NCBI RefSeq assembly: GCF_001194135.2
Contig: NC_068994.1
Span: forward strand, 16,169,850-16,216,457
DNA from: Octopus bimaculoides
Lineage: Eukaryota
DNA: 46,608 nt
Reading direction: 5' to 3'
Shown here piece by piece: positions 73 through 44,523 of this stretch. Numbering within the stretch: the first letter of the stretch is position 1; every line of letters starts with the position of its first letter. The notes below the pieces were generated by a model. That model was not told the DNA's origin and ran no database searches. It saw only the letters and a list, made by a program, of their open reading frames with translations. A program made the translations under genes and the position numbers.

Positions 73-716
73 CTGAAAACAGGGAATATAAATATGCAAA
101 TTTAAGTAAACTTAACTGCACACACACGCACACACACACACACACACACGCACGCACACACACACACACACACGACCTATATAGTAGATAAATAAACAGG
201 GTAAATTTATCTATTAAGCTCGATGTAATTAACTTACTCCTCCCCTAAAATTTCTGGCCTTGTGCCACAATTTGAAACCAATATTCATGACCACAAGAAG
301 TAATTAAAATATGACACAACATCCTCACAGGACACAGAAATGGAGCTTAGTCAGGATAAGGGCTCAATCATGCAAGAGTTCTGCGTGGCAGTGTGACCCC
401 TGCTACATGCAGCAACCAAATTTCCTTCAAATCACACCATACCATCTTAAGTTAGGATATGATGCACTGATCTTGGTGAGCTCTTTCTGCTACATGTCAC
501 AATGTGTATAGTGACATGACTGGGTCAGCAACTGCATATGTAGAACAATATGCTAACTCTTAGATGTGAACATGCTTATCTCTTTCTTTTTAATGAAGGG
601 ATAACATCAAAAAAGTTTTTTAAAAACTTTCCTTTCATTAAAATGTTAAGCTTACACTTTATTTCTTAAATTTTGTTCCTCTTATGCTGTCAACCACTCC
701 ATGACTAACTCAAGGA

Positions 717-767
717 ACCCCAGACTAGATTTAGTTTTGCCTATACTGTAGGAATCGTCAGTGAGTA
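717..767 (-). ncRNA. Degenerate type-I hammerhead ribozyme, family a (copy 1)
   Basis: Minus strand: TACTCA CTGACGA T TCCTA CAGTA TAGGC AAAA CTAAATCTAG TC TGGGGT. G12 is mutated to A. Inverted copy of 1133-1183. Confidence 0.75.
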
Positions 768-1132
768 CTGCTTGAATGGTGCATGATCAGCTAATCCCCT
801 CTGCCAGAATATCTGTATTTATCTTATAAGTTTATGAATGATTCAGTCCTCACAAGGTTGCCTCCTGTCAGCACGTGTGTATACATTTTGCGCTCTTCCT
901 ACTTGCATTAATGAGTATTTTAACTCTTATTTCTAGAAATGTAAGTACTTCCGTAACCTTAGTCATATTTAGTGATGATTAGATTTTTCCTTTAGGATAT
1001 CACATTGCACCTGACTGTTTATATTAACCTTTAGTATATGCATTAGCATTTTGGTAAACCATCCACAAATTTTCATGGTAAATACATATATGCTGGTTGA
1101 GGGAATTAGCCAATCATGTGCCATTCAAGCAG

Positions 1133-1183
1133 TCCTCACTGATGACACCTACAGTATAGGTGAAACTAGATCTCATCTGGGGA
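1133..1183 (+). ncRNA. Type-I hammerhead ribozyme motif, family a (copy 2, core nucleotides intact)
   Basis: TCCTCA CTGATGA C ACCTA CAGTA TAGGT GAAA CTAGATCTCA TC TGGGGA: stem I 6 bp, stem II 5 bp, near-palindromic stem III. Confidence 0.8.
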
Positions 1184-1378
1184 TCCTCAAGTTGGTTATG
1201 GGGCAGTTGCTTTCCCTGTCAGCATGTGTGTATACATATTGTACTCTTCCTACAACATAAAAAGTATTTTAACTCTTATTTCTGGCAATGTAGGTGCTTC
1301 GGCATCCTTAGTCAGACTTAGTAACAATTGAATTTTTCCTTTATGGTATCACATTGCGCCTGGCTGTTTATATTGATT

Positions 1379-1440
<62 letters not shown>

Positions 1441-2572
1441 TTCATACATATATATACACACATATATACATACACATATATATATATATACACACACACA
1501 CCACACACACATATGTAAGAGAAAAGAACAAGTTGTTACATATACTTCAGTATTCGGCAAAACATGACCTCATATTTTAAATGGAACCAGTAGATGGCCC
1601 CTATAAGCTGCACCTACTGGTTCCACCTATTAGCATGATGTAATGGGAAGCCAAATACTGATATACATTTGAAGAAAAGCAACAAAAATTCATTAGGTTA
1701 TAGCAGTATGTACGTTAAGATGTGCAATGAAAATGTACTCCTCAGCTGCATAATGGAAGTTCATTTTAGAAAGTCATTTTGTAGATGTGTGCAAATACAA
1801 GAGTAGGAGATGAAGAAAATACCATCTTGTCTGGGCTGTTAATCAACAGTCTAGGAGTACATTTTCATTGCACATCTTATGAGGTGTTCTCACTACAGGA
1901 ATAAATGAAGTTTGTACGAACGTACGTACTACTATAACCTATTGAATTTTTGTTGCTTTTCTTCAAATTTTATTCACCAAATCTCTTGATTTTGTTTTTG
2001 GTTTTTACCCTACCAAATTCTGGTGCCTCAAACATTTTAAGTACCACATTTAATCTTTTGATTAAATCTATANNNNNNNNNNNNNNNNNNNNNNNNNNNN
2101 NNNNNNNNNNNNNNNNNNNNNNNNNNNNNNNNNNNNNNNNNNNNNNNNNNNNNNNNNNNNNNNNNNNNNNNNNNNNNNNNNNNNNNNNNNNNNNNNNNNN
2201 NNNNNNNNNNNNNNNNNNNNNNNNNNNNNNNNNNNNNNNNNNNNNNNNNNNNNNNNNNNNNNNNNNNNNNNNNNNNNNNNNNNNNNNNNNNNNNNNNNNN
2301 NNNNNNNNNNNNNNNNNNNNNNNNNNNNNNNNNNNNNNNNNNNNNNNNNNNNNNNNNNNNNNNNNNNNNNNNNNNNNNNNNNNNNNNNNNNNNNNNNNNN
2401 NNNNNNNNNNNNNNNNNNNNNNNNNNNNNNNNNNNNNNGTATATATTCTTATTAATATGAGAAATGCTTTATCCTTAATTTTCATGAGTTCAGCTTAGCA
2501 GATAAATTTCAATTAAGCTTGAAAATTCTATACATAGCAATACAATGATATCATTTTCAATGTTTTCCTTAC

Positions 2573-2810
2573 AACGACGGTTTCTTTCCATTTTTCATGC
2601 TTATCTGCAAGAGCTTTGGTTAACTTGGTTGCTCGTTTCAATCTGACAGCTGTCTGGGTGATCTTACATTCAAGCCTTTCTTTCTCTTCTACACTTTCAT
2701 CATATGTTTTTTGCAGAGCAGCAATTTGTGCCACAACTTTAGCCAAAGCATCCTGGTGTACTTTCAGGTTAGCCATGACAATAGCAAGCTCTTCTTTAGC
2801 TTTTGCAAGC
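2573..2810 (-). CDS. DNAH6: Dynein heavy chain exon (stalk CC2): LAKAKEELAIVMANLKVHQDALAKVV...RLKRATKLTKALADKHEKWKETVV
   Basis: tgatag acceptor, gtaagg donor; 238 nt; RL.RA.KL..AL motif. Confidence 0.93.
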
Positions 2811-2842
2811 CTATCAAAAGAATAAAAATAAAAGTAATATAT

Positions 2843-3370
2843 ATATTGGGAACAAGAATGGGCCCCAACTATGCAAACCTATTTGTTTGCTACATTGAGG
2901 CCCAAATATTCTCATGATTCACTGGTCCCACTCCCGAATTATAAGGTCGTTATATTGATGACTGTATCAGTGCAACCTCACTCTACTACGAACAACTAGA
3001 CTCCTTCCTCTTTTTTGTCCAATCCTCCCATCCTGCCCTCAATTTCTCCTGCACTATTTCCAAAACTTCCATTACATTTCTCGACATTTCTGTTAGCATA
3101 AAACACTCCGCTCTCACTACCTCCATCCACTACAAACACACCGACTCACACTTCTACCTTAACTTCTCCTCCTCCCACCCTACCCACACCAAGCTCTCCA
3201 TCCTCTACTCTCAATTCCTCCGTCTGCGCAGGCTCTGCAGTGACAACCATGGCTTTAAAACTCAGTCTCAACTCATGGCTCACCACTTCATCCTTCGTGG
3301 ATATCCCTCCACCACTATCCAGACAGCCCTTGCCAGGGCACACTCCATGAACTGTGCTTCTGCTCTCTCT
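2843..3370 (+). pseudogene. Penelope-like element reverse transcriptase fragment
   Basis: One frame with two stops: GTRMGPNYANLF...GRYIDDC...TFLDI...HYKHTDSHFYL..SSSHP.HTK.SI.YSQFLRLRRLCS...RGYP. These are PLE RT and thumb motifs. Ends in microsatellite and an N gap. Confidence 0.88.
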
Positions 3371-3721
3371 CTCTTTATTATATATATTATATATATATAT
3401 ATNNNNNNNNNNNNNNNNNNNNNNNNNNNNNNNNNNNNNNNNNNNNNNNNNNNNNNNNNNNNNNNNNNNNNNNNNNNNNNNNNNNNNNNNNNNNNNNNNN
3501 NNNNNNNNNNNNNNNNNNNNNNNNNNNNNNNNNNNNNNNNNNNNNNNNNNNNNNNNNNNNNNNNNNNNNNNNNNNNNNNNNNNNNNNNNNNNNNNNNNNN
3601 NNNNNNNNNNNNNNNNNNNNNNNNNNNNNNNNNNNNNNNNNNNNNNNNNNNNNNNNNNNNNNNNNNNNNNNNNNNNNNNNNNNNNNNNNNNNNNNNNNNN
3701 NNNNNNNNNNNNNNNNNNNNN

Positions 3722-3782
<61 letters not shown>

Positions 3783-4266
3783 AATCAAAATATACACTAT
3801 TATAGATCCATTACACCCGATCTTACTAATCAGTTTCACACTGAGCTATAGACCTGGATGGTAGATAACAGCATGGTTAAGCCAGTTTTAGTACCCAATG
3901 CAAAAGCAACTGGTAAGATCAACTGTAATGGATCTATAATGCTGCATACTTTGTTTAATATACCCACTGTATTGCCAAATATACAAGTGCATCATTTTCC
4001 TAACTTATAGATTCTTAGATGACTATATACAATAAACAAGGAGCATTTAGACATCCAAGCATTTGTCAGCTAAATAATTTGAGCACTATCTGAAGTTTTA
4101 TAAAGAAGATATTTTTTATTCAATCAGGTCTGACAGTACACCTTCTGGTGCTATTGTGCAATATACATTACATAATATACATGACTAAATCATTGTTTTT
4201 GTCAATATATTTAATTGAATTAAATGGCAGTAGAAGACAGAAGTAAATTAATAAATCCATTCTTAC

Positions 4267-4349
4267 CGTTGCTGTTTGGGTTGGACTGCTCGAAAAACAT
4301 ATGCATACAAGTTAATAGCTCTCACCCACATACACAACGATTTACAAGC
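4267..4349 (-). CDS. DNAH6: Dynein heavy chain exon: ACKSLCMWVRAINLYAYVFRAVQPKQQ(R)
   Basis: Not in the ORF track. ttttcag acceptor, gtaaga donor; 83 nt; ACKS.C.WVRA motif. Confidence 0.95.
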
Positions 4350-5744
4350 CTGAAAATTGGAACAGACGTTTTATCAAGTAATACAGTAACTCTCACACAT
4401 AGTTAATTATGTTAACATTATGCAAATATTACTAAGTATTTCAAAGACTCGACAGCTACAAATTTTCTCAAATTATGTCAGACATGATTTATCAATATTG
4501 TAAATTATACAACTGCCAAAAGTGAGATATTTGCTTTCTGTTGTATAATAAGAAAAGCAAAAACTGAAAAGATGCTAAAATCACAGATTGCATTCATCTA
4601 ATTTTCATAATGTGCTGTTGTATTACAAAAGAATGATAAATATATAACTAGAAAAATCATTAATGTTTGGAAATAATTTTTAAGCTAATGATTTGCATAT
4701 ATTAAAATGTAATCAGTTAGGTAAAACAGGTCCTGTGTGCACACACGTAATTGTGCCCAGAAGAAAAACAAGAAATCACAGTTGCACATTGTTTTATCCA
4801 TTAACAAATTGTTAAATCATTTTTGAACTTTTATATTTGATTTTCACTAAAAAGGCTAAAGAGTTATGGGAATTTTTAAAATTTAAAAGCCATTGCTTAC
4901 ATAATTTCATCTTCGTTTTTTAAACAAAATACATTAAACAAAATATACACAGTATTAAAAAAAAATGTTATAAAATCAAAGATAACATTTCAATAAATCG
5001 CATTTGATGATTTAAAGAATTTTCTCAATGTTGAAGAAAATGTAAAATTAATCTCAATATATTCTTAGTGAAAACAAGGCATGTTTCTATAATAGAAGTT
5101 TATATTACACCTTCCAGCCAAAAATCACAAACTAGAATTAAATGAAAGCTGCTGGAAAATAGTAATTAATTTTTCTAAAAAAAAAAAAAAGAAATATATA
5201 AATAAATAAAAGAAAATCAAAAAGACAATGCAACTGTTCCTAAATTATATTTTGGAATAATACGGAAAGATTTCCTCGACTGATACTAAATAGTGGAAGT
5301 TTTTGCTTAGAGCTATATTAAATCCTAAAGGCCATGATCCCCATCAACCTGCCTTCTTTATTCAAACCAATATTAAGATTAACATCAACAATAACTAATA
5401 CCAGATACACAACATATTCTTTACTCATTTCAAATCTGGAAGCATTCTACATTTATCTACTGAAATCTTACAGAAGAAATCCTAACATCATTGATTTTAA
5501 CAACATAAAGTAAATTTTAGGTAGAATAAACAACCTACTAAACATAACAGGTAAACTTTGCTCCAATCATATTCTACCACCTTAAAAAGAGTTGGGGAAA
5601 CATTGAATAATGTAGTTTAAGATACACTATGTCTGAAAAATAAATGTGGTATTCTTGGCTAGAAAGCCTTTTATCAGAGACCTTTTCAGTTACAGTTGAT
5701 GCCTGTGATAGAATATTGTCACAGCCAATAAAAGAAAGTACAAA

Positions 5745-6300
5745 GGGGTGGCTGTGTGGTAAGAAGCCTGCTTCCCAACCATATGGTTCCGGGTTCAGTT
5801 CCAACTCGCGACACCTTGGGCAAGTGTCTTCTACTGTAGCCTTGGGCCAACCAGAGCCTTGTGAGTGAATTTGGTAGACAAAACCTGGAAAAAGCCCATC
5901 ATACATTCATTTTTCTGTATTGTATAGCAGAGGCAGCTTGGGGAAAACTGAATGAAATCTTTTACATTTGAATGAGAATCAATGCTTCTTAGTTACACTC
6001 TAAAGAAAACAAATGAATATTATTTGTAGACAGCTACATAGCCTAGAAATTAATTGTGCTAATATTAACATTTTCTATATGTATGTATATACATGTATAT
6101 ATCTGTTTGTCTTTGTGTTTGTGATTGACAATTGGTGTATTTAGATTCCCATAACTTAGTGGTTTGGTAAATTAGACTGACAGAATAAGTACTTGGCTTA
6201 AACAATAAGGCCTGGGGTCGATTTGTTCAAGTAAAAACTCTTCAAGGCAGTGCTCCAGCATGGCCACAGTCAAATGACTGAAATAAGTAAAAGAGTAAAA
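5745..6300 (+). mobile_element. tRNA-derived SINE (family A), interrupted by a 173-bp non-SINE insert at 5906-6078
   Basis: Head gtggctgtgtggtaagaagcctgcttcccaacc...ccgggttcagtt; the 3' half resumes after 6080 and ends ...gtaaaagagtaaaa. Confidence 0.8.
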
Positions 6301-7494
6301 AGAATAAAAGAATGTACGAATAGTACTTTAACTGAATGAACTAAATAATGAATGATTTTTCTGAAGAAAATTAAATTCACATAACATGTTAAGATTGGAT
6401 CAACAATCAGAAGCAGACAATGCATGTGTATAAGTGACAGGGAGACTATTTGTTAAGTGAGCTGAAATTTGAACAAAAAAAAACACATGTAGATTATGCA
6501 CACATACATATATAAATGGCTGAGTGAATGAGTAGAAAACAGTTCATTAACACCCATGTATACATTTAATGTAGCTTGCAATTTTCATATTTCATATAGA
6601 AAATAAGAATATTTCTCAAATTTTTTGCTAAAAACAACCATGGATTGACAGAAGCAAGACAAAAGAAAACACATACATACTTATACACACACACACACAC
6701 ACACACACACTTATACATACATACATANNNNNNNNNNTATATATATATATATATATATATGTGGCAAGAAGAAAATGGAGGGAATCCAGAGGTAGTATTC
6801 ATCAGCATTAGACATTATATTATGTCTATTTATTTATTTTAAACAGTTCAGATAATATATATAAATACATGTGTAAAGTAATAGTAATTTCAAGAATTAA
6901 TAGTTGGTTGAAGTTGAATTAATATTTTTTCTTCACTTATAGGGACCTTACTGTATTTTATAAGATATTTACTAAATGAGATTGGTTTCAAATTTTGGCA
7001 CAGGGCTAGCATTTTGAGGGAGTGGGGTAAGTTGATTATAATCACCACAGTGCTTAACTGGTACTTATTTTATCAACCTCAAAAGGATGAAAGGAAAAGT
7101 CAACCTTGGTGGAATTTGAACTCAGAACATAAAGATGGATAAAATACCATTAAGCATTTTACCCAGAGCTGTAATGATTCACCAGCTCACTGCCTTAGAA
7201 TATCTACTAGATAATATTTATTTATCATTGACAAGCCAATAACTGAAATCTGTAACTGAAGTTATAAAATATGCTTACTTTGCAGTGTGGACTGGATGCT
7301 TTTACACTTTTTACCATAAGAGAGAATCTTTTCTCTATGGTAATTGCAGTGAATTTACCTTTAGAAGTTAAAATATGTCACAAACATATTTTAACTAACC
7401 AAAAGTATATATATATATATTATTACTAGTACTATATATCTATATGATCACTACTATTGTTTGTAATGTCCCCTTTTCTATACTTTATGCATCA

Positions 7495-7810
7495 GATGGA
7501 ATTTGGTGAAGCAGATTTTCTACACACTTCCAGTTATCTACTCTCATCTGTTTCTATGCAAGGTTGTTTATGAAAGACCAGCAGTCACCCATGCATACCA
7601 GCCTCCCCTCTCCATACCACTGATGTTATCCAAAGGAAATGCAAAGATCAATACGGCTCAGCACAAGTGACACTGCAACTCATTTCTGAGTGAACTGGAG
7701 TAATGTGAAATAAAGTGTCTTGCTCAAAAACACAACACACGCCCTAGTCTGGGAATCAAACTTCAAGATTCTGAGCTCAATGCTTTAACCACTGAGCCAT
7801 GTGCCTTCAC
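7495..7810 (-). mobile_element. tRNA-derived SINE (family E), diverged; homologous to about 33650-33990
   Basis: Shared core cagcagtcacccatgcataccagcctcccctctcca; the head reads gaaggcacatggctcagtggtta on the minus strand. Confidence 0.7.
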
Positions 7811-8611
7811 AAGTGTGCAAGTGTGTATATATAAATAATCCTTCAGTTTCCATCTACCAGATTCACTCACAAGGTTTTGGTCAGCCCAGGACTAGAGAAA
7901 CAGACACATGACAAAGGGGCCATGCAGTGGGGCTAAACCAGAAATCGTGTGGTAAGAAAGCAAACTTCTTAGCAATACAGCTATGCCTGCACCTATGATC
8001 AAAGCCATTCCACTATGACCATCTCATCTTTGTTGTATATCTCAGACAGTATTATCCAAGGTGCTTTTCATTTTTAAAATAATAATATGCAATTTCAGGG
8101 AGATTAGGCTACTAAGTAGCCACATGAGGCCACATGAGGCAAAAGTCAGTGTGCATTGTATTCTGCAAAATTTCATGAAGCAAGTGCATCCAGCCCAAGC
8201 AAGCATAAATCATAAGCATTAAATAGATCATGTGCATGAAACAAAACCTCTTCCTTGCTATGTATCATATATTTCCATCGGAAGTACTAGTAACTTAAAA
8301 ATAAATGCAAATGTTTATTTCAATCAGATAGAAGCTGTCATAAACACTTGGAAATTAATATTTTTGTTTGTTTGTTTTTATTTTTGTTTTTGTTTTGTTT
8401 TGTTTTTTATTTGCTTTAATAGCTATATTTCCAATTTTTCAAAACTATCTCCTTTCATTTTCTTTCAACATCCTATAGATTCAGAAAATGCAATAAATTT
8501 AGAACAAAACAAAACTATGTATTAAAACTGTTAAATTTAATTCATAATTGGTTTTGTTTGAAAGAACATGTACAAAAAGAAAAAAAAAAAGCAACTTATA
8601 TACAAGACTAC

Positions 8612-8645
<34 letters not shown>

Positions 8646-9284
8646 GCAGTGTAATGCATAAAGGAACAATTCGTTGCCAATGGCTATTTCATTTTTCTGT
8701 ATTGTATAGCAGAGGCAGCTTGGGGAAAACTGAATGAAGTCTTTTACATTTGAATGAGAGTCAATGCTTCTTAGTTACACTTTAAAGAAAACAAATGATT
8801 ATTATTTGTAAACAGCTCCATAGCCTAGAAATTAATTAACTGTGTTAATATTAACATTTTCTATTTTTATTCATCATAATGTTGACCAAGAGAATTGTAT
8901 TCTCTAAAAAATCATAATGATTGTCATAGAACACTTTGGTTGGGTAGCTTTTCTTTTTTAAAGCAAAATTTTAAGAAAATTTTAATTAATTTATATCAGC
9001 ATTTTCCCCTTCTAGCAGTATTTTTATTTTGGTCATATGTAGTTAATTAGTAATATATACATTGAATAAATCAATCAACAATATTAATTAATACATACAA
9101 GAACAGTAGTCAGACTAATATGGACGTATTACTGTGTATAGATGCTATATGCTCAGTGAAAAATGCTGGAATTGATGATGGCATTGTTGTTGTTACTATG
9201 TTTTGAGTTAACTCTGATCAAGCTAAACAATGAGAAGTGACTCATTCATCCTTCTTTGCACTAATACCATGTCTTCATCTAACT

Positions 9285-9605
9285 CAGTGGTTCTCAATCA
9301 GTTTTTTCTTATGGACCTCTTTAATTCGTATTTTCCTCTGCTGGACCCCCAAAGTCATTCACTNNNNNNNNNNATATACATTCTTACTGATTTTTTATAA
9401 TTAAATATTATTAGGAATCAAAATATTTTGTGTACTGTAGAAGTATAAGCAATTTATAACACAAATTTTAACAACAAAATTTTATACAGATCCCCAAGGG
9501 ACATATGGACCCCCCAAGGAATATATGGACCCCCAAGGGACATATGGACCCCCAAAGGATATATGGACCCTCAAGGGACAAATGGGCCCCAGTTGAGAAC
9601 CACTG
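9285..9605. mobile_element. hAT-type MITE with an internal minisatellite of about 20 bp
   Basis: TIRs cagtggttctcaa / ttgagaaccactg; 8-bp TSD ATCTAACT/ATATAACT; about five ccccaagggacatatggac units at 9491-9590. Confidence 0.85.
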
Positions 9606-9645
9606 ATATAACTGAACAACCCAAAATATAAAAATGAATATTTAC

Positions 9646-9808
9646 CTTGGAGACATTCTCAACAATCTCAGGATAGAATTTTGGGTTATCAATATAGACT
9701 TTGAGTTTTCTCAATAACTGATCAGGTATATGATCCTTGTCGTAACTACGGAGTGTTTTCAAAAAGTTTTGGTCAGCTAACACACTTTTAGCAGCCTGCC
9801 AGTCAGTC
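9646..9808 (-). CDS. DNAH6: Dynein heavy chain exon (MTBD): TDWQAAKSVLADQNFLKTLRSYDKDHIPDQLLRKLKVYIDNPKFYPEIVENVSK
   Basis: tttcag acceptor, gtaaat donor; 163 nt; in frame with both flanking exons. Confidence 0.95.
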
Positions 9809-34946: not shown

Positions 34947-35096
34947 CTGTTATGATGGATATTAAAAAAATACATAAAATACAAAAATATTCCTTACTAC
35001 AATATGCACAAGGCCTGAAATTTGGTGGGAGGGAGCTAGTCAATTACATCGACCCCAGTGTGTAACAGGTACGTATTTCACTGTCCCCAAAAAGAC

Positions 35097-35550
35097 TGTA
35101 GTGACGCCTAATACCAGTCGCCATTTTGGAGAGTTCGCCCATGCATGCGCAGGGACATGTTTTCCGGAAGGTATGCAGGAAGTCCCTCATGCACATGCAT
35201 GGTCATCCTATATCCAAGCGTTCCCGCCTTTTCTCTACCTCTTAGCGCTGCACATTCGAGGACACCAGACCACTAAGAGCCACTCTGTCAACTCTGCTTT
35301 GAGTCAACACAGTCTACCACGGAGACAGTGAAGAATGGCTTAACCATCCAGCAACTATACTAATGCTGTCTTCACACCAACCATAAAGGGCGACCTAGCA
35401 AAGCCGTTATCCTGAGATGTAAGGCTGAGCACCTCGTAATAAATATTTGTTATGCTGTTATTCAATTCATTCAGCGTTTTCGTTTCCTTATTGAAGAAAA
35501 TTGATTGTACGGGATAGGGTTACCCAAAGATGGTGGCCCTATCACCTACA
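35097..35550 (+). mobile_element. Solo LTR (Ty3/gypsy-like) inserted in a family B SINE
   Basis: TGTAG...CTACA termini; 4-bp TSD AGAC at 35093-35096 and 35551-35554; AATAAA near 35439; SINE sequence continues on both sides. Confidence 0.85.
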
Positions 35551-36203
35551 AGACGAAAGGCAAAATCGACTTCAGTGAAATTTGAACTCAGGACGTTAAG
35601 GACAGATGAAACGCTGCTGAGTATTTTGCCTGATATGCTAATAGTTCTGCTACTCACCATCTTAAAAAAAGAGAAATNNNNNNNNNNNNNNNNNNNNNNN
35701 NNNNNNNNNNNNNNNNNNNNNNNNNNNNNNNNNNNNNNNNNNNNNNNNNNNNNNNNNNNNNNNNNNNNNNNNNNNNNNNNNNNNNNNNNNNNNNNNNNNN
35801 NNNNNNNNNNNNNNNNNNNNNNNNNNNNNNNNNNNNNNNNNNNNNNNNNNNNNNNNNNNNNNNNNNNNNNNNNNNNNNNNNNNNNNNNNNNNNNNNNNNN
35901 NNNNNNNNNNNNNNNNNNNNNNNNNNNNNNNNNNNNNNNNNNNNNNNNNNNNNNNNNNNNNNNNNNNNNNNNNNNNNNNNNNNNNNNNNNNNNNNNNNNN
36001 NNNNNNNNNNNNNNNNNNNNNNNNNNNNNNNNNNNNNNNNNNNNNNNNNNNNNNNNNNNNNNNNNNNNNNNNNNNNNNNNNNNNNNNNNNNNNNNNNNNN
36101 NNNNNNNNNNNNNNNNNNNNNNNNNNNNNNNNNNNNNNNNNNNNNNNNNNNNNNNNNNNNNNNNNNNNNNNNNNNNNNNNNNNNNNNNNNNNNNNNNNNN
36201 NNN

Positions 36204-36253
<50 letters not shown>

Positions 36254-37200
36254 ATTAAGCATATACATCAATAATTATTTACTCCTGACTTCAAATCTTG
36301 TTAGGGTTATCTTTGCCTTTCATCCTTTCAGGTAAAGGTACACTGGACTGTTGCCCAGGGTCCTCTTGGGTACAGGGGCCAAATTCTGATCTAAGTATGC
36401 CAGGGCTTGTTGTCAATAAATAAACATTATAAGGCTCAGTGCAATAATTTGCTTCAGGTCTCATAATGCAGCTAAGATAGCTCCGCCTTCAAGATCAATA
36501 AAACCAAGTAAACCAGTCAAGTACTAGAGTTGATGTTATTGACTAAACCCTCCCACTCAAACTTGCGGGCCTTGTGCCTAAATCAGAAATCATAATAGCA
36601 ACATGAGCTGGTAGAAACATTAGAGCATTTATCTTTCATCTTTTAGTTGTTTCAGTCATTTGACAGTGGCCATGCTGGAGCACCGCATTGGAGAATTTTT
36701 ACTCAAATAAATTGGCCCCAGAACATTGTTTTTTTCAAGCCCGTTACTTATCTTATTGATCTCTTTTGCTGAACCACTAAGTTATGAGCACATAAACACA
36801 CCAACACCAGTTGTCAAGCAGTAGTGGAAGACAAACACAGACACAAAAATACGCACACACACACACACACACACATATATACATGATGGGCTTCTTTCAG
36901 TTTCTGATTCCCAAATCCACTTACAAGGCTTTGGTTGGCCCAAGACTATAGCAGAAAACACTTGCTCAAGATGCAATGCAGTAGGACTGAACCTGAAACC
37001 ATGTAGTCGGGAAGCAAACTTCTTACCACACAGCCACAAATGCAATCTCTTCACCCTGTTTATTGTTTAATGCAGTCTTCAATTGATGCAGTTAACATAC
37101 ACATAACCATATTAGGAATTAAATGGAATGGTTATTAAATCCGAGAATTTTTGTCTATTATTTTCAAGAATGAAATATGAATTATTGAACAAAAGCTCAC

Positions 37201-37382
37201 CGGACTAGATTAATAGCATAGTTAAGTACTAAATCTCTGTTCTGTTCTGGAATACCAATGTCTTTGGCAGCAGGTCGACAGGCGTTAATCAGTTTTTCAT
37301 TATCCTCTGCTTCCAGGAGGTTTGGAACTTCTCCAGAATTTAACATATTATTTATGTCCTCCAGAAATTCTTCCATCACAAT
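37201..37382 (-). CDS. DNAH6: Dynein heavy chain exon: IVMEEFLEDINNMLNSGEVPNLLEAED...NYAINLV(R)
   Basis: aattag acceptor, gtgagc donor; 182 nt; conserved FLEDINN.LNSGEVPNL motif. Confidence 0.95.
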
Positions 37383-37556
37383 CTAATTTTAACAAATGAT
37401 TAAAGCTATAATTAATAAATTTTTATATAAACACAGTTGCCTAATTAAATTCCTAAGGAAGAACTAAAAGATATGCACACACACACACACACTCATGTAA
37501 CTGTATACATGTATACTAGTCTGTGTTTGATATATGTGTGTGTATACATATATATG

Positions 37557-37622
<66 letters not shown>

Positions 37623-37894
37623 CATATATATATATACATACACATATTAATGAAGTAAATGCATGCATGTATTAATGAAGTAAATGAGCACACACACACA
37701 AACATACAAAATACATACACACACGAAATAAGAGATTTAAATCAAAAGAAGAAATGTAGCTAAGGTTCAGAAGAAAATTATAAATGCAATTAAAAGTGAT
37801 GTTATAAAACACTGACACATTACTGATACATATAACAAACAACAAGCCGGATAAATTTGTCTGCTTTTCCTATCAGGTACTAGAAAAAACAGAC

Positions 37895-38300
37895 ACGTGT
37901 GTAACACACTTGTCATCGTTGTTGGCACTCCGTCACTCACGACGTCGAGGGTTCCAGTTGATCCGATCAATGGAACAGCCTGCTTGTGAAATTAACGTGC
38001 AAGTGGCTGAACACTCCACAGACACGTGTACCCTTAACATAGTTCTCGGGGATATTCAGCATGACACAGTGTGACAAGGCTGGCCCTTTGAATTACAGGC
38101 ACAACAGAAACAGGAAGTAAGAGTGAGAGAAAGTTGTGGTGAAAGAGTACGGCAGGGTTCGCCACCATCCCCTGCTGGAGCCTCGTGGAGCTTTAGGTGT
38201 TTTCGCTCAATAAACACTCACAACGCCCGGTCTGGGAATCAAAACCACGATCCTATGACCGTGAGCCCGCTGCCCTAACCACTGGGCCATTGCGCCTCCA
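37895..38300 (-). mobile_element. Young tRNA-derived SINE with head ggaggcgcaatggcccagtggttaggg; second copy at about 41613-41980
   Basis: Two highly similar copies with A and B boxes on the minus strand. Confidence 0.88.
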
Positions 38301-39019
38301 CACACACTAGTCATATGAGCCAAATTAACCACACTTACTTCTTTTTGACCTAGTTTTTTTGAATTAGACATTTGAGCTTGATATCTTTTGAGTATCAAAC
38401 CTTACTGACTAGAAAACAGGAAACCTACCAGTTCCCTGCTTTTCTTTTGTTTTTTTATTTAGATATCTTCTCACATCAAATTTATCTTCAAATTAAGCTT
38501 TGGCTCTCTGGGATAGTAATATCATACCCATAGCAAGGAACTGTGGTTTTGCTTACTTAACCAACTTATTTTGTGTAATTCTCTAATTGTCTTCTTAATA
38601 AATAAGCAAGGACTTTCTAAGTACAACATTCAAGAAACTGTCAACTTTCCTCAGAGTCAGTATTTGCAGTCCAGTTCACAAGGTAAGTATAACTGATTCA
38701 GACAATGCCCTCATCTAAAACGTTTCCTACTATAAACATGGAATTTCCCATTTGTTGAATAGATTTGCCACAGCTTTGAATATTACCACAGCTAGAGCCA
38801 ATGTAAGGGGGATAACCCTTACTTTTATTTATTTGTATATTTTCTATTTACAAACCAATTACGTATTTCTTCCTCTAGTTGTAGAGAGGTTATGCACCTT
38901 CAGCCGTTTGAATCTGATGAGTCAGCGATACTGCTAAGTGCTTTATCGGTGCAAAATCAATGGCCACTCTATGACTGGTCATAACTTTCGACTTCCTTAA
39001 AAGTGCATTTACTGCTCTA

Positions 39020-39325
39020 ATACTTTAGAGTGTGCTTCTTTTTCAAATATATGAAACTAATGACAATGATCTCATTTTTGTGGCTGGTGATTTTAATGGG
39101 CACGTTGGACAGCAACCTGGTATCTTCCATGATGTTAATGGGGGGGAGGCATGGAATTGGTTCCCGAATTGAAGAGGGAACTAGGTTGCTGGAGTTCTGT
39201 GATGCAAGCAGCCAATTGACTTGCAACACCAACTTCAGGAAGCCAGCCAACCACCTGATAAACTATCAATCATGTGATTCTGCTAGCCAGATTGATTTCA
39301 TTCTCACCAAACAGAGAGATATGTT
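39020..39325 (+). pseudogene. RTE-clade LINE AP-endonuclease fragment
   Basis: VAGDFNGHVG...HGIGSRIEEGTRLLEFC...CNTNFRK...SQIDFIL with a frameshift. Confidence 0.85.
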
Positions 39326-39854
39326 GTAATTTTGGAGATATGCTGTAATTGAGAAGACCCTGCAAGTAAAGTGAGATTGCAGCTGTGGCCAATACCTGTG
39401 TCACATAACCAGCCTATTTAAAAGTACCCTTAAATCACCAGGCAACACACTGTGCTTGAGAAGACCTGTTGAGACAAGTGAAATCAAAATCGAAATCATA
39501 GTCGTAGCCAATGCCAGTGCCACCTGACTGGTAACTGTGCTGGTGGCATGTAATAAGCACCATTCAAGCATGGGTTGATACCAGTGATGCGTGACTGGCT
39601 CTCTATGTCCGTGGTATGTAATAAGCACCCACTACACTCTCAGATTGGTTGGCATTAGGAAGGGCAACCAGCTGTAGAAACCTTGCCAGATCAGATTGGA
39701 GCCTGGTGCAGCCTACTGGCTTGCCAGTCCTCAATCAAACTGTCCAACCCATGCCAGCATAGAAAACGGACATTAAACAATGATGATGATCATGATGATA
39801 TATATAGATATATATATATGTATGTGTGTGCATGTATGTGTGTGTGTATGTGCG

Positions 39855-39874
<20 letters not shown>

Positions 39875-39885
<11 letters not shown>

Positions 39886-40124
39886 ATAAGAGTGAAAAAA
39901 CTACAGAAGGCTTGTGTTACTTGGTTAAAGTATATATTTAAATTATGTCAGAAAAATGTTAGCTTTTATCTCTCTTTCTCTTTCTTTTTTTCTGCAAAAG
40001 ATTGCAGAAAAAAAGAAAGAGAAAGAGAGATAAAAGCTAACATTTTTCTGACATAATTTAAATATATACTTTAACCAAGTAACACAAGCCTTCTGTAGTT
40101 TTTTCACTCTTATTATCTTTTATA
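39875..40124. repeat. Perfect 250-bp palindrome (123-bp arms, 4-nt loop AAGA)
   Basis: 39875-39997 is the exact reverse complement of 40002-40124 by manual comparison. Confidence 0.93.
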
Positions 40125-40373
40125 CATCCAACCACGTGCTTTCACATACCAACTTTCTCACACACATACATATATATATGTATGTATATTTGTAAAGTGG
40201 TTGACATGAGGAAGGGCATCAAGCTGTAGAAACCAACCCAAAATAGACTATTGAACGTGGTACGGGCACTGGTCTTGGCAGTTCCTGTCAAGTTGTCCAA
40301 TCTACAGCAGCATGGAAAACGGACATTAAATGTTGATGATGATAATGATGATGATATACAGACACACACATAC

Positions 40374-40524
40374 CTGAGTATCGTTAAATAAGAAGACAAT
40401 GTTTTCATTTTTGCAACCAGCCAGCTCATATAACTTTTTCAAATCCTCACGAAAAGCCAGGTAATCATAGCCACGCCTCAGTTCAATCTGAAAACACTGA
40501 TAACCACATATATGGGCAGCCAAC
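40374..40524 (-). CDS. DNAH6: Dynein heavy chain exon: LAAHICGYQCFQIELRRGYDYLAFREDLKKLYELAGCKNENIVFLFNDTQ
   Basis: tttctag acceptor, gtatgt donor; 151 nt; joins the previous exon in frame (AA+G = K). Confidence 0.95.
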
Positions 40525-40578
40525 CTAGAAATAAGAAGAGACAGAGAGAGTGAGAGAGAGATAAAGAAACAAAGTTAT

Positions 40579-41134
40579 AGTATTCAGTGGCATGTGACAA
40601 CTTGCTGGGGCTACTTGCTGGAGCCTAGCAGCAGGAAGTTTAGACAGTGTCATGTGACAACTAGCTGGTGCTGCCTACTGGACCCTAGCAGCGGGAAATT
40701 TAGACAGTGTCACGTGACAACTAGCTGGGGCTGCCTGCTGGAGACTAGCAGTAGATATAAAAAGGGGAACTTGACATGACGATCAGTCGGACGCTGACAC
40801 TCGTTGATGCTGCATCGAAGAGGCCAGGGAATAGAAGAAAGAACACATGCACCCAACACCAGAGCTGAAGACACCTCCAAAAGGAGGGGCCCCCCCACGT
40901 CAAAACGGTAGAGGAGTAGGGGCTGAAACCGGACGTGGTTCCTCCTGATGATGTCTTGAGCTAACTGGATCCTATAAAGGAGCTGTTGTGGTAGCAGACC
41001 ACGAAACATGGTTGAAATTCCTCCCCTTATTCTTTTACAAATTCCAATCACTGGAATGCAGGAATGCAGCAATGCTGTGGTACAACATTCATAGATTTTA
41101 ATCGGTAATATCAACCCTAGCAATTTGTCTAATA
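40579..41134 (+). mobile_element. LTR-like element with three 60-bp tandem units upstream of a TATA box
   Basis: Units register at 40591, 40651 and 40711; TATAAAA at 40756. The end ...taataca is restored at 41403 once the hAT MITE is removed. No convincing TSD. Confidence 0.55.
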
Positions 41135-41393
41135 CAGTGATCCTCAACCATTTTTTGCCTGTGGATCCCTTTGATTTCCATTTTACTCAACTGGACCCTG
41201 ATAAGCCATTCACTGTTTAGAAAAAATCCCATTATATCTTTATAATTAAATATTATTAGGAATTGTATTAAAAAATTGTTTAAAATATTTTGTGTGTTGT
41301 GGAAGTATAATGAATTTATTGCACATAAATTTCAACAGCAAAATTTTATGTGGACCCCGCAAGGGCCATCTGGACACTGATTGAGTACCACAA
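41135..41393. mobile_element. hAT-type MITE, same family as 9285-9605
   Basis: Degenerate TIRs cagtgatcctcaa / ttgagtaccacaa; 8-bp TSD GTCTAATA/ATCTAATA; homologous interior. Confidence 0.8.
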
Positions 41394-41534
41394 ATCTAAT
41401 ACATCTTTTATTGATCTTCTAAGAATGAAAAGGCAAGTCTTCTTTAGTAAAAATGTCAAAACTAAATATCATAAGGTAATTTTGCTCACCACACCAGTTT
41501 TGGTAATTCATTACCAATACACACACACACACAC

Positions 41535-41571
<37 letters not shown>

Positions 41572-43351
41572 GCCAAGCTTCCACATAATCTATTGTTGTA
41601 TTTCAGAAGGATCATTGTTGTTGGCACTCCGTCGCTTATGACGTCGAGGGTTCCAGTTGATCCGATCAACGGAACAGCCTGCTTGTGAAATTAACGTGTA
41701 AATGGCTGAGCACTCCACAGACACGTGTGCCCTTAATGTAGTTCTCGGTGATATTCAGTGTGACACAGTGTGACAAGGCTGACCCTTTGAATTACAGGCA
41801 CAACAGAAACAGGAAGTAAGAGTGAGAGAAAGTTGTGGTGGAAGAGTACAGCAGGGTTCGCCACCATCCCCTGCCGGAGCCTCGTGGACCTTTAGGTGTT
41901 TTCCCCGGTCTGGGAATCGAAACCGCAATCTTATGAGTGTGAGTCCGCTGCCCTAACCACTGGGCCATTGCCCCTCCACTGATGGATCATTATGCCAATA
42001 ATAAACAACACACTCACTGGTTTTATTTAACTTCTTTTATATTTATTAACCAACTGGCAAGCTGGAAGGATCATTAGTATGCTGGGCAAAATGCTCAGCA
42101 GCATTTTGTCTATCTATACATTCTGAGTTCAAATTCTGCCAAGGCCAAGTTTGCCTTTCCTCATTTCAAGGTCAATAAAATAAGTACTGATTAAGTACTG
42201 GGGTCAATGTAATTGACTTACCTACTCCCTCGAAATTGCAAACCTTGTGCTAAAATTTGAAATCATTATTAGTAGTCAACTAGATAACCATTTAACCAAT
42301 TAACTAATTAGTTGTTTGGTCAATCAATCAGTCAGTCATGTTTGTCAAATGCCTTTCATTGCCACTCGTGACCTCATAAATGAAATGCCCTTTCCTATCA
42401 ACATCTACTTCAAGTCTGATAAGGTCATGAAAAAGGCCTTTGACAAACTTAGATGATTGATTGATTGATTGATTGATTGACTGACCCAACTATTAATCAA
42501 ACAACTGATTAGTTACTTAATCAAATGGTTAACTAGTTGACTAATAGTAATGATTTCAAATTTTCAAACGAAGCCAGAAACTTCAAGGGAGTGGGGAAGT
42601 CGATTACATCAACCCCAGTACTCAACTTGTATCTATTTTATTAACCCCAAAAAGATGAAAGGCACAGTCGACCTCAGAGGATTTGAACTCAGAACATAAA
42701 GACGAACAAAACGCCACTAAGCATTTTGCCTGGAATGCTAACAATTCTGCTAGATCACCATCTTAAAATTTGTACCTCACACTGGGACTGATCCTGGAAC
42801 CATGTGGGTGGGAAGCAAACTTCCTACCACACAGCCACACCTGCTAGTTGACTAATAATAATAAAAGAAGTGAAATACAACCAGAACATGTATTTATTAT
42901 TGGCATAATGACCCTCCCAAGATACAGTAAAATCTGTTTCAACACATAAATTCATATCAAGCATCGTGCAAGCCAAACAAAAAAACAAGGTTTATTCTTT
43001 AGATATTTTTATAGATTCCTATCATAAACAATGTCCAATGGCCATACTGGGGCACTGCTTTTAAGGATATTGTCAATTGTGTATCAACACCAGTATTTTT
43101 ACTGGTATTTATTTTCTTGACTTTGGAACAATAAAAGACCAAATTGACCTGGGTGAGATCTGAACTCAGAATGTAAAGAGACATAGGCACAGGCATGGCT
43201 GTGAGATAAGAAACTTGCTGCTCAACCACATAGTTCCAAGTTCAGTCCCACTGTGTGGCATCTTGGGCAAATGTCTTTTACTATAGCTTTGGACTGGCCA
43301 AAGCCTCGTGAGTGGATTTGGTAGACAAAAACTGAAAGAAGCCTCTCGTGT

Positions 43352-43387
<36 letters not shown>

Positions 43388-43487
43388 ATTACGTATGTAT
43401 GTATGTGTATACATCTACCTGTGTCTTTGTATCTGTTTGTTATATATATAATTATATATATATATATATATATATATNNNNNNNNNN

Positions 43488-43536
<49 letters not shown>

Positions 43537-44478
43537 AAATACACACACACACACATATATATATACAAACTCTATACATACACACATATATACACAGGCT
43601 TCCACACAGTTTCTTATTTCTTTATGACCCACAAGGGGCTAAACACAGAGGGGACAAACAAGGACAGACAAAGGGATTAAATCGATTACATCGACCCCAG
43701 TGCGTAACTGGTACTTAATTTATCGACCCCGAAAGGATGAAAGGCAAAGTCGACCTCGGCGGAATTTGAACTCAGAACATAAAGACAGACGAAATACTGC
43801 TAAGCATTTCGCCCGGCGTGCTAACGGTTCTGCCAACTCACCGCCTTCAACAGTTTCTGCCAACCTAATTGACTCATAAGGCTTTTGTAAATGGTTGGCC
43901 TGGGACTATAGTATAAGGCACGAGCCCAAGGTTCCACACAGTGGGATTGAATCTCAAACTACATAGGTTCCAAGTGAGCTTGTGAACCAATTTTAATGCT
44001 AAGCTCAATTTATTTTCACACACACACGAAGATAACAGGGGAAAAAACATTTTGACTCTTTCTGCTAAATCAATATATAAGCAATAGGTCTTTAGTGACA
44101 CCCTAATTACCTCATGGATAGCAATATGTCATGTAAATGATGTCCATAAAAACTTTCAGTAAGTCAGTGATATGAAGAACTTAAAGAAAGAATGAAAGAA
44201 TGAAAATATGTGGTCTGTCTATGTAAGGAAAAATATAAATTCCAGTCACTACATTTCAATTGACAAAACTCATTAATTGTACAACAGGGGTACATAAGTC
44301 TAAGTAATTAATGTTACATATAGCATTGAATAAAATATATTTCGGTGAAGTCATATTTAACACATTCAAGAGCATTTGGACATGATAAGACCTTCCATTG
44401 CAGAAACAGTCCCAGGAGAAATTTTACTCCTAGACAGGTGTGAAAACACATTTTGGGCTGTGAATAATGTCACAGGGT

Positions 44479-44523
44479 CATAGGATGCATGTGTTTCGAC
44501 ATCATTTTGCTTCATCAGCTACA
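44479..44523 (-). ncRNA. Degenerate type-I hammerhead, family f
   Basis: Minus strand: TGTAG CTGATGA A GCAAAATGATGTC GAAA CACATGCA TC CTATG. Core intact; stem III reverts to palindrome ACGCATGCGT by two CpG changes. Confidence 0.55.

What the first reader, a model, noticed from the sequence alone, without database searches (positions are those of the whole stretch)
689..44523. At least six unrelated hammerhead-ribozyme element families in the introns of one dynein gene
Seen: eight motifs with the hammerhead layout stem I - CUGANGA - stem II - GAAA - palindromic stem III - UH - stem I, at 717, 1133, 10776, 11255, 16873, 23151, 31103 and 44479, with six different stem sequences. Many lesions are CpG transitions that revert to a canonical ribozyme. 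Established: minimal type-I hammerheads with palindromic stem III mark Penelope-like pseudo-LTRs and metazoan non-LTR retrozymes, which self-cleave (often as dimers) and can form circular RNAs. Inference: this genome carries a diverse, largely ORF-less set of ribozyme-bearing mini-elements mobilised by Penelope RT; Penelope RT and GIY-YIG remnants are in the same window. Five copies are sense to the DNAH6 pre-mRNA.
Basis: partly seen in the sequence, partly recalled or inferred. Interest (0 to 1): 0.85.

Follow-up and report, generated by a model that had tools for sequence, protein, structure and literature searches.

The report
Decayed Penelope-type hammerhead relics in octopus introns
Seven of the eight reported sites are mutated leftovers of hammerhead ribozymes carried by Penelope-like retrotransposons that landed in the introns of an octopus dynein gene, a known and ordinary kind of genomic debris; none looks able to cut RNA today.

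Summary
Seven fit the type-I hammerhead layout; 16873 has only the two core boxes. None is intact.

- **Chance:** descriptors that allow CpG decay recover 11255, 23151, 44479, 1133 and 31103, and 10776 with one core mismatch. Dinucleotide shuffles give 0 to 0.18 hits per window.
- **Families:** five unrelated stem sets, A (717/1133), B (10776/11255), C (23151), E (31103) and F (44479), not "at least six".
- **Penelope link:** shown for C only. Its ribozyme lies about 175 nt after a Penelope-like ORF remnant.
- **Architecture:** A and B are head-to-head inverted pairs of 5'-truncated 3' ends. A and E end in microsatellites. This is the published Penelope insertion pattern.
- **Open point:** whether A, B, E and F are ORF-less families or truncated autonomous elements.
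- **Retrozyme test:** no two same-strand ribozymes lie in tandem, so none qualifies here.
- **Context:** ten dynein exons on the minus strand are collinear across the internal gaps.

Verdict: real, and a new member of a known kind; low interest.

The parts
717..767 (-). Family A hammerhead relic, sense to the dynein gene. TACTCA CTGACGA T TCCTA-CAGTA-TAGGC AAAA CTA-AATC-TAG T C TGGGGT. G12 is now A at a CpG position; the 10.1-11.1 pair and the outer two helix I pairs are broken; helix III is intact.
1133..1183 (+). Family A hammerhead relic. Both core boxes intact, extra C after A9, helix II 5 bp, helix I 6 bp, helix III broken (TCA where the other copy has TAG). The helix III inferred for the ancestor, ACTAGATCTAGT, is a perfect palindrome.
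691..1375 (.). Family A insertion complex: inverted arm 691-843(-); abutting partial direct copy of the tail 843-1030(+) that lacks the ribozyme core; unit 1057-1375(+) with the ribozyme; it ends at a (TA)n(CA)n microsatellite, 1376-1520.
   Evidence: the hairpin formed by the two arms has z = -15.6
10776..10822 (-). Family B hammerhead relic, sense to the gene. ATGATG TTGACGA GTCA-CAAAAA-TGGT GAAA C-ATCGAT-G T C CATCAC. The only core lesion is C3 to U; loop 3 is palindromic.
11255..11301 (+). Family B hammerhead relic. G8 and G12 are both A, each at a former CpG; helix I 6 bp; helix II 4 bp.
10615..11490 (.). Family B insertion complex: arm 10624-10821(-), extending 5' to about 10870; arm 11256-11450(+), with its tail running to about 11490; a third inverted fragment holding only the last ~65 nt of the tail (11212-11247 plus 10933-10966), split by a later SINE-like insertion at 10965-11213.
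22347..22976 (+). Remnant of a Penelope-like ORF (RT C-terminal region, linker and a GIY-YIG-type motif, IYSIPCSCGRLYRGE...EEH). It begins just after gap 22020-22259, so its 5' extent is unknown.
   Evidence: (homologues 53-76% identical, some carrying RVT_1 and HTH_animal; Octopus vulgaris and O. sinensis named)
23150..23197 (+). Family C minimal hammerhead relic, about 175 nt after the ORF stop and about 95 nt before the element's 3' end (~23290). G12 and G16.2 are both A at former CpGs, and helix II has one inserted C.
2850..3400 (+). 5'-truncated RT fragment of a second Penelope-like lineage (RT motifs MGP..AN and RYIDD, then FLD...YLNFSSSHP). It is cut by gap 3403-3721 and starts about 40 nt from the acceptor side of exon 2576-2812.
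   Evidence: (24% identity to P0001, E = 1e-12)
31103..31192 (-). Family E probable hammerhead relic, sense to the gene. Core boxes intact, helix III the palindrome ACATATGT, helix I 5 of 6 pairs, helix II 4-5 bp closing an atypical insert of about 50 nt. The tail runs to a (TG)n tract at about 30855-30875, just upstream of exon 30661-30816.
44456..44548 (-). Family F hammerhead relic (core motif 44478-44524), sense to the gene, about 220 nt into the intron. Core boxes intact, extra A, G10.1-C11.1, bulged 3-bp helix II. Helix III ACACATGCAT becomes the palindrome ACGCATGCGT if two CpGs are restored. Helix I is 6 bp, followed by a 10-bp closing stem GGCTGTGAAT/ATTCACAGCC.
16873..16916 (-). Site D, not supported. 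It has CTGATGA-N10-GAAAC only, with no helix I and no palindromic helix III, and the boxes lie inside two unrelated hairpins.
2576..44955 (-). Ten DNAH6-like dynein heavy-chain exons covering AAA4 to the stalk: 44743-44955, 40365-40526, 37200-37379, 34751-34978, 30661-30816, 21544-21744, 11612-11725, 9619-9849, 4266-4352, 2576-2812.

Best explanation
The sites are dead remnants of type-I hammerhead ribozymes. They arrived as part of the 3'-terminal non-coding region of Penelope-like retroelements, or of elements that depend on them, inserted into the large introns of an octopus DNAH6-like gene.

In a live element the ribozyme lies in the pseudo-LTR or 3' UTR. It is thought to cut multimeric transcripts after the UH site, and its short palindromic helix III lets two copies pair into an active dimer. 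This role is established knowledge about the family and was not tested here.

Because the ribozyme lies near the 3' end, target-primed reverse transcription with frequent 5' truncation leaves short fragments of ribozyme plus tail. Penelope integration often also adds an inverted 5'-truncated copy next to the first. That explains the head-to-head pairs in A and B, the partial tandem in A, and the ends at microsatellites.

At least five unrelated families inserted independently. All have since decayed, largely through CpG transitions. No copy has an intact core together with intact helices. In the inverted pairs the ribozyme strand is also locked in a roughly 150-bp duplex with its antisense copy. 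They most likely have no present function in the dynein pre-mRNA.

Shown here: the motifs, their excess over chance, the link of C to a Penelope-like ORF, and the insertion architecture. Inferred: past self-cleavage, mobilisation by Penelope RT for A, B, E and F, and present inactivity.
For: - **Above chance:** CpG-aware descriptors give 3-4 hits where shuffles give 0-0.18. Intact core boxes 7-17 nt apart occur 6 times against 1.13 expected.
- **Penelope link for C:** the ribozyme follows the ORF remnant at 22347-22976, whose homologues carry RVT_1 and HTH_animal. The same ORF-then-ribozyme arrangement recurs in O. sinensis L001 and O. vulgaris L003, with partial tandem and inverted copies.
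- **C consensus:** L003:11872-11931(-) is a perfect minimal hammerhead. In the five-copy alignment 86.7% of cells are paired, against 15-56% when partners are slid, and two pairs show compensatory changes.
- **CpG decay:**
- **Published minimal-hammerhead features present:** an extra nucleotide after A9 (A, C, F), G10.1-C11.1 (B, C, F) and palindromic helix III or loop 3 (all five).
- **Penelope-type architecture:** head-to-head inverted arms, a third tail-only inverted fragment in B, ends at microsatellites for A and E, matching PMC8557442 and the opposite-strand pairs 100-700 bp apart in PMC4209133.
- **Same architecture elsewhere:** an unrelated family in O. vulgaris shows it too, L003 6648-6920(-) and 6989-7260(+), ending in (CA)n.
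- **Duplex:** the A pair folds at -216 kcal/mol, z = -15.6.
Against: - Only C is physically tied to a Penelope-like ORF.
- A, B, E and F have no copies outside the window in the roughly 66 kb of other DNA I could fetch, of which only 33 kb is Octopus. Their family consensi, copy numbers and 5' ends are therefore unknown.
- E and F are single copies supported only by descriptor statistics, and those descriptors were relaxed after seeing the sites. E has an unusually long helix II insert.
- Pfam does not recognise a GIY-YIG domain in the ORF remnant or its homologues. That call rests on reading the motif.
- Rfam gives no above-threshold hammerhead. This carries little weight, because Rfam also misses the perfect O. 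vulgaris copy.
- No cleavage assay or RNA data were available.
Confidence: 0.8

Rival explanations
1. A, B, E and F are true ORF-less non-autonomous elements (retrozyme-like or SINE-like) that carry their own hammerheads and are mobilised in trans by Penelope RT.
For: - Units are short, about 235-330 nt from ribozyme to 3' end.
- The families share no sequence with the 3' end of the C element or with each other.
- Both arms of the O. vulgaris family G pair start at the same position, which hints at a defined short unit.
- Recent work derives animal retrozymes from Penelope pseudo-LTRs.
Against: - No tandem same-strand ribozyme pair exists in the window, so the defining retrozyme arrangement is absent.
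- Arms of different lengths in A and B, and the 65-nt tail-only fragment in B, look like random 5' truncation.
- A second, very divergent Penelope-like lineage is present, so unsampled autonomous families with other 3' ends are likely.
- The full-length form of these families cannot be seen from 46 kb.
Confidence: 0.3
2. The motifs are chance matches that a permissive reading allows in an AT-rich, repeat-rich sequence.
For: - No copy is intact and Rfam is silent at gathering score.
- With two free core mismatches a loose descriptor returns about 17 obviously spurious hits.
- Core boxes alone are expected about once per window.
- This explanation does fit 16873, and probably 34309, 46465 and the exon hit at 30738.
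Against: - Structured descriptors give 0-0.18 hits per shuffled window against 3-4 real hits.
- Independent copies of C in two other species restore a perfect ribozyme.
- A and B each occur twice with the motif conserved.
Confidence: 0.04
3. The inverted pairs A and B are foldback or MITE-type DNA transposons whose terminal inverted repeats happen to contain a hammerhead-like sequence.
For: The arms are inverted, with the tails at the outer ends. They fold into a long hairpin.
Against: - The outer ends do not coincide: the left B arm stops about 40 nt short of the right one.
- B has an extra tail-only fragment, and A an additional direct partial copy.
- Units end in microsatellites rather than defined termini.
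- The same ribozyme-plus-tail architecture is seen on ORF-bearing family C in O. sinensis, including an inverted copy.
Confidence: 0.04
4. One or more sense-strand intronic copies, F above all, is a working ribozyme or structured element used in dynein pre-mRNA processing, like the conserved intronic hammerheads of amniotes.
For: F and E keep both core boxes. F has a 10-bp closing stem and lies about 220 nt from a donor site. The B copies give weak HH9 matches.
Against: - Helix III of F has two mismatches.
- E needs a dimer partner that is absent.
- 717 has lost G12 and 10776 has lost C3.
- Sense and antisense copies are equally decayed.
- Conservation at the orthologous introns could not be tested.
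Confidence: 0.03

Closest known systems
Minimal type-I hammerheads of Penelope-like elements (Cervera and De la Pena 2014, PMC4209133)
   Same: - Core boxes, with an extra nucleotide between A9 and 10.1.
- G10.1-C11.1, and a palindromic 15.2-16.2 or loop 3.
- Several unrelated consensus families per genome.
- Mostly solitary motifs from truncated elements.
- Pairs on opposite strands 100-700 bp apart.
- Family C is an exact case: helix III is just ACGU and the motif lies 3' of the RT/EN ORF.
   Different: B and E lack the extra nucleotide. A, B, E and F have a helix III with a palindromic loop, closer to canonical metazoan type-I motifs. Only C is shown to sit on an ORF-bearing element. I found no paper describing octopus families.
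Metazoan non-LTR retrozymes (Cervera and de la Pena 2020, PMC7229834; Li et al. 2026 preprint, 10.64898/2026.07.22.740005)
   Same: Type-I hammerhead with a short palindromic helix III, low GC, units of a few hundred nt, co-occurrence with Penelope-like elements, many families, frequent monomers, and common intronic copies (42-44% of copies in Xenopus).
   Different: Retrozymes are head-to-tail tandem repeats, each unit with a ribozyme, and are expressed as circular RNAs. Here there is no same-strand tandem pair; the arrangements are solitary or inverted. Expression is unknown.
Penelope-like element insertion architecture (Craig et al. 2021, PMC8557442)
   Same: Strong 5' truncation, partial tandems that form pseudo-LTRs, an inverted 5'-truncated copy abutting the 5' end, a bias for (CA)n and (TA)n microsatellites, and the hammerhead in the pseudo-LTR.
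   Different: Full-length copies are not present in the window, and both ORF remnants are cut by assembly gaps.
[quoted passage not shown]
   Same: Type-I hammerheads in the sense orientation inside introns of protein-coding genes. The B copies give weak HH9 matches.
   Different: Those are single-copy, ultraconserved and intact. These are multi-family, repeat-derived and mutated, and score far below the family cut-off.

Membership tests
Hammerhead ribozyme, type I | CUGANGA box | tested here: met
   Intact in 1133, 717, 23151, 31103 and 44479. There is one lesion each in 10776 (C3 to U) and 11255 (G8 to A at a CpG).
Hammerhead ribozyme, type I | GAAA box with G12 | tested here: inconclusive
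   Intact in 1133, 10776, 31103 and 44479. G12 is A in 717, 11255 and 23151, each preceded by C, which fits CpG decay. For C the G is confirmed by copies in two other species.
Hammerhead ribozyme, type I | Three helices around the core, helix I open, UH cleavage site | tested here: met
   Met for seven sites, allowing 0-2 mismatches per helix. Not met for 16873.
Hammerhead ribozyme, type I | Self-cleavage | not testable with these tools
   No assay was possible. Every window copy has at least one core or helix lesion.
Hammerhead ribozyme, type I | Match to curated Rfam hammerhead models | tested here: not met
   There are no hits at gathering score, and HH9 reaches only 28 and 21.6 bits against a cut-off of 52. 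The control shows the models also miss the perfect O. vulgaris minimal hammerhead.
Penelope-type minimal hammerhead | Unpaired nucleotide between A9 and 10.1 | tested here: inconclusive
   Present in A, C and F; absent in B and E.
Penelope-type minimal hammerhead | Palindromic 15.2-16.2 or loop 3, allowing a dimer | tested here: met
   Present as read in B 10776 (ATCGAT loop) and E (ACATATGT). It is reached only after inferring the ancestral bases in A (ACTAGATCTAGT), C (ACGT, confirmed by other copies) and F (ACGCATGCGT).
Penelope-type minimal hammerhead | Location in the pseudo-LTR or 3' non-coding end of an RT/EN element | tested here: inconclusive
   Met for C, in the window and in L001 and L003. 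Unknown for A, B, E and F.
Penelope-like element | Penelope-type RT | tested here: met
   The ORF at 22347-22976 is homologous to proteins with RVT_1 plus HTH_animal. The fragment at 2850-3400 aligns collinearly to the RT motifs of P0001, E = 1e-12. Pfam does not score the window fragments themselves.
Penelope-like element | GIY-YIG endonuclease | tested here: inconclusive
   The motif IYSIPCSCGRLYRGE...R...EEH is conserved across 19 homologues. Neither Pfam nor PDB sequence searches match it, so the assignment rests on my knowledge of the Penelope endonuclease motif.
Penelope-like element | Complex tandem or inverted 5'-truncated insertions and a microsatellite bias | tested here: met
   also L001 and L003.
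Non-LTR retrozyme | Head-to-tail tandem units, each with a hammerhead | tested here: not met
   No two same-strand ribozymes of one family occur in the window. The upstream partial unit of A (843-1030) lacks the ribozyme core.
Non-LTR retrozyme | Expression as circular RNA of 170-400 nt | not testable with these tools
   No RNA data were available.

The most novel reading that the evidence does not exclude
Octopus genomes may carry many distinct short hammerhead elements whose usual integration product is a head-to-head inverted dimer rather than a tandem array. When such a dimer sits in an intron it is transcribed into a perfect-length double-stranded RNA hairpin (z = -15.6 for the A pair), which would be a ready substrate for the very active cephalopod ADAR editing system. 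A-to-I editing could even mask the G-to-A lesions at the RNA level. The evidence does not exclude this, and nothing here tests it.
Probability: 0.08. Interest if true: 0.5.

Novelty: new member of a known kind. Interest (0 to 1): 0.22.

Why it matters
The result adds octopus to the animals in which Penelope-type hammerheads occur as many unrelated families. It also gives a worked case of CpG decay being confirmed against copies in sister species. For annotation, it shows that these relics are invisible to Rfam and need dedicated descriptors. It does not open a new question: family diversity, solitary and inverted copies, and intronic locations have all been described for other animals.

Tried and rejected
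- **Rfam:** gathering and E-value searches gave only microsatellite-driven miRNA noise plus two weak HH9 hits. The control on L001 and L003 showed Rfam cannot see this hammerhead variant.
- **Loose descriptor:** allowing two free core mismatches returned about 17 spurious hits, so I dropped it.
- **Site 16873:** I tried type-I, type-III and long-range pairings by hand and by folding. None fits.
- **More copies of A, B, E and F:** self-BLAST of the window, BLAST against four fetched loci and one exact-pattern scan of metagenome contigs for family B found nothing beyond the window.
- **Orthologous dynein locus:** the protein search returned no Octopus dynein, so orthologous introns could not be compared.
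- **ENA loci L002 and L004:** these are not Octopus, since they share no SINEs with the window, and were of little use.
- **Protein domain searches:** Pfam and PDB sequence searches did not recognise the decayed RT and EN fragments. The first two RT searches timed out.
- **Similarity between families:** none was found outside the core.
- **Covariance model:** I considered building one from the candidates but did not, because it would be circular.

Full report
**What the window is.** It is 46.6 kb at 36% GC with 13 runs of N. A Penelope-like ORF remnant in it matches proteins named from Octopus vulgaris and O. sinensis at 74-76% identity. The window shares dozens of SINE copies with O. sinensis and O. 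vulgaris loci. It is therefore from an Octopus genome or a close relative.

**Gaps and gene structure, tested first.** tblastn with DNAH6-like homologues maps ten exons on the minus strand: 44743-44955, 40365-40526, 37200-37379, 34751-34978, 30661-30816, 21544-21744, 11612-11725, 9619-9849, 4266-4352 and 2576-2812. The best named relatives are "dynein heavy chain 6, axonemal". The exons run in strictly increasing protein order, and plausible splice sites can be read at several of them.
- Every gap that lies between two exons is thus bracketed by collinear coding sequence.
- About 40 residues of the stalk, expected between the exons at 21544 and 11725, were not found. One exon may lie in gap 13589-14191 or 17938-18195, or be too diverged to detect.
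- Gaps 2073-2438 and 45725-45734 are not bracketed within the window.
- No motif lies within about 890 nt of a gap. Both Penelope-like ORF remnants, however, are cut by gaps (3403-3721 and 22020-22259).

**The observation.** None is intact.
- A strict type-I descriptor finds nothing.
- Rfam finds nothing at gathering score, and only sub-threshold HH9 matches at the two B copies.
- Rfam's silence carries little weight. It also fails to report, even at E = 1, a perfectly canonical minimal hammerhead that I later found in O. vulgaris.

**Chance.** I wrote descriptors in which TG may stand for an older CG and CA for an older CG, and compared the window with dinucleotide-preserving shuffles.

| Descriptor | Sites recovered | Expected per shuffled window |
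|---|---|---|
| Compact, CpG-aware | 11255, 23151 | 0 (0 of 100 shuffled windows with a hit) |
| One core mismatch allowed | adds 10776 | 0.07 |
| Bulged 3-bp helix II allowed | adds 44479 | 0 to 0.05 |
| Longer helix III remainder | adds 1133 | 0 |
| Long helix II insert, one helix I mismatch | adds 31103 | 0.017 (loosest form: 4 real hits against 0.18) |

- The later descriptors were relaxed after seeing the sites, so their figures flatter E and F somewhat.
- Site 717 is a 78%-identical inverted copy of 1133.
- Site 16873 passes nothing. It has only CTGATGA-N10-GAAAC, and the boxes sit inside two unrelated hairpins.
- Intact box pairs 7-17 nt apart occur 6 times against 1.13 expected. One of the six lies inside a dynein exon. 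I treat 16873 as a chance match.

**Anatomy of the five supported families.**
- **A:** TCCTCA-CUGAYGA-N-(N)CCUA/UAGG(N)-GAAA. The inferred helix III, ACUAGAUCUAGU, is a perfect 12-nt palindrome. Copy 1133 has an intact core but a broken helix III. Copy 717 has lost G12.
- **B:** GUGAUG-CUGACGA-GCCA/UGGC-GAAA-C-AUCGAU-G-UC-CAUCAC. Copy 10776 has U3. Copy 11255 has A8 and A12.
- **C:** a true minimal hammerhead with helix III reduced to ACGU.
- **E:** intact boxes, helix III ACAUAUGU, and a helix II insert of about 50 nt.
- **F:** intact boxes, an extra A, G10.1-C11.1, a 6-bp helix I and a 10-bp closing stem. Helix III becomes a palindrome if two CpGs are restored.

The families share nothing outside the core. 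Their features match the list that Cervera and De la Pena gave as arguing against chance: an extra nucleotide after A9, G10.1-C11.1, and palindromic 15.2-16.2 or loop 3.

**The Penelope link.**
- The C ribozyme lies about 175 nt after the stop of the ORF at 22347-22976. Homologues of that ORF carry RVT_1 and HTH_animal and share the conserved IPCSCG..Y.GE...R..EH motif.
- O. sinensis L001 and O. vulgaris L003 hold further copies with the same ORF-then-ribozyme order, in partial tandem and inverted arrangements.
- In the five-copy alignment the consensus is a canonical minimal hammerhead. 86.7% of cells are paired, against 15-56% when partners are slid, and two pairs show compensatory changes. 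This is a small sample.
- Between the B arms 14 of 35 differences are CpG-context transitions; between the A arms, 12 of 45.
- A second, very divergent Penelope-like RT fragment lies at about 2850-3400(+). It is 24% identical to P0001 with collinear motifs, E = 1e-12, and its relatives carry HTH_animal.

**Architecture and mechanism.**
- A is an inverted arm (691-843, minus) that abuts a partial direct copy of the tail (843-1030). A full unit with the ribozyme follows (1057-1375), ending in (TA)n(CA)n.
- B is two inverted arms of unequal length plus a third inverted fragment holding only the last ~65 nt of the tail. A later SINE-like insertion splits that fragment.
- The tail of E ends in (TG)n.
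- An unrelated hammerhead family in an O. vulgaris intron shows the same head-to-head pair ending in (CA)n.
- This is the published Penelope insertion pattern: heavy 5' truncation, partial tandems, an inverted 5'-truncated copy at the 5' end, and a microsatellite bias. It also matches the opposite-strand ribozyme pairs 100-700 bp apart reported in Schistosoma.
- Because the ribozyme sits near the element's 3' end, truncated copies keep it.

**Activity and orientation.**
- Five reported sites are on the gene strand; four remain if 16873 is dropped.
- Sense and antisense copies are equally damaged.
- No two same-strand ribozymes lie in tandem, so no circular RNA could be released.
- In the inverted pairs the ribozyme strand would be held in a long duplex with its antisense copy (-216 kcal/mol, z = -15.6).
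- I infer that all copies are inactive relics.

**Comparison with what is known.**
- These work like, and family C is a member of, the Penelope minimal hammerheads.
- A, B, E and F are Penelope-type or retrozyme-type hammerhead relics whose parent elements are unknown.
- They fail the retrozyme definition as seen here, because no tandem units are present.
- Many families per genome (57 in Xenopus), frequent monomers and common intronic copies (42-44%) are already documented. The giant squid genome paper reports 235 Rfam hammerhead hits.
- I found no paper describing octopus hammerhead families.
- The finding is real but ordinary: a new member of a known kind.

Noticed in passing
window 45407-45706 and 45735-46034: Two 300-nt stretches are 100% identical and lie on either side of the 10-N gap at 45725-45734. 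This is most likely an assembly duplication at a scaffold join, not biology.
   Followed up: partly
window 46465-46494 (+): An unlisted hammerhead-like site, CTGAAGA-A-GGAAT-TGTA-ATTCC-GAAA-TATC. It has intact boxes, an extra A, a 5-bp helix II with G10.1-C11.1 and an AUAU helix III, but no helix I. It may be a further relic or chance.
   Followed up: partly
window 34309-34337 (+) and 30738-30764 (-): Two more intact box pairs. The first loosely resembles family C and sits just upstream of a tRNA-like SINE head. The second lies inside dynein exon 30661-30816 and is certainly chance.
   Followed up: partly
window 843-870 compared with 1128-1214: The upstream partial A unit begins with CAGTCCTCA and then jumps to the post-ribozyme sequence. 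Either the ribozyme core was deleted between two TCCTCA repeats, or the copy starts within a few nt of the predicted cleavage site. The alignment is too ambiguous to decide.
   Followed up: partly
L003 6648-6920 (-) and 6989-7260 (+), Octopus vulgaris: A further hammerhead family, CTGATGA-T-GGGA..TCCC-T-GAAA-CAGCTG-T-A, forms a head-to-head inverted pair with arms 86% identical. It lies in an intron of a pyridoxal-decarboxylase gene and ends in (CA)n next to a SINE. Both arms start at the same position.
   Followed up: partly
window between 11725 and 21544: About 40 residues of the dynein stalk, present in all homologues, are not found. One exon is probably hidden in gap 13589-14191 or 17938-18195.
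   Followed up: partly
window 20210-20614 (+): A mariner/Mos1-type transposase N-terminal remnant. HTH_48 scores 22.8 bits, just under the cut-off of 24.1.
   Followed up: partly
window 28194-28418 (-): An ORF with a ...RMHWFGRVMHM...GRRRPWKTWDEVV... motif that looks like the C-terminal tail of a non-LTR (LINE) ORF2. Pfam found nothing, so this rests on reading only.
   Followed up: no
window, e.g. 15615-15817, 27642-27800, 43184-43386, 5737-5939; and 10335-10571, 13328-13564, 17719-17955, 43611-43847: Two abundant SINE-like families, at least five and eight copies respectively. Both also occur in the O. sinensis and O. vulgaris loci. A third repeat (10965-11213, 39548-39799, 18335-18527, 45141-45324) is inserted between the B arms.
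   Followed up: partly
window 2850-2914 compared with exon 2576-2812: The Penelope-like RT fragment starts only about 40 nt from the acceptor side of a dynein exon, on the opposite strand.
   Followed up: no
window 1375-1445, 24380-24712, 37530-37724, 39810-40052 and others: All the Rfam E-value hits to mir-297, mir-466, mir-3149, Phe_leader and similar models fall on (TA)n, (CA)n or (TATG)n microsatellites or on a low-complexity palindrome. They are artefacts.
   Followed up: yes
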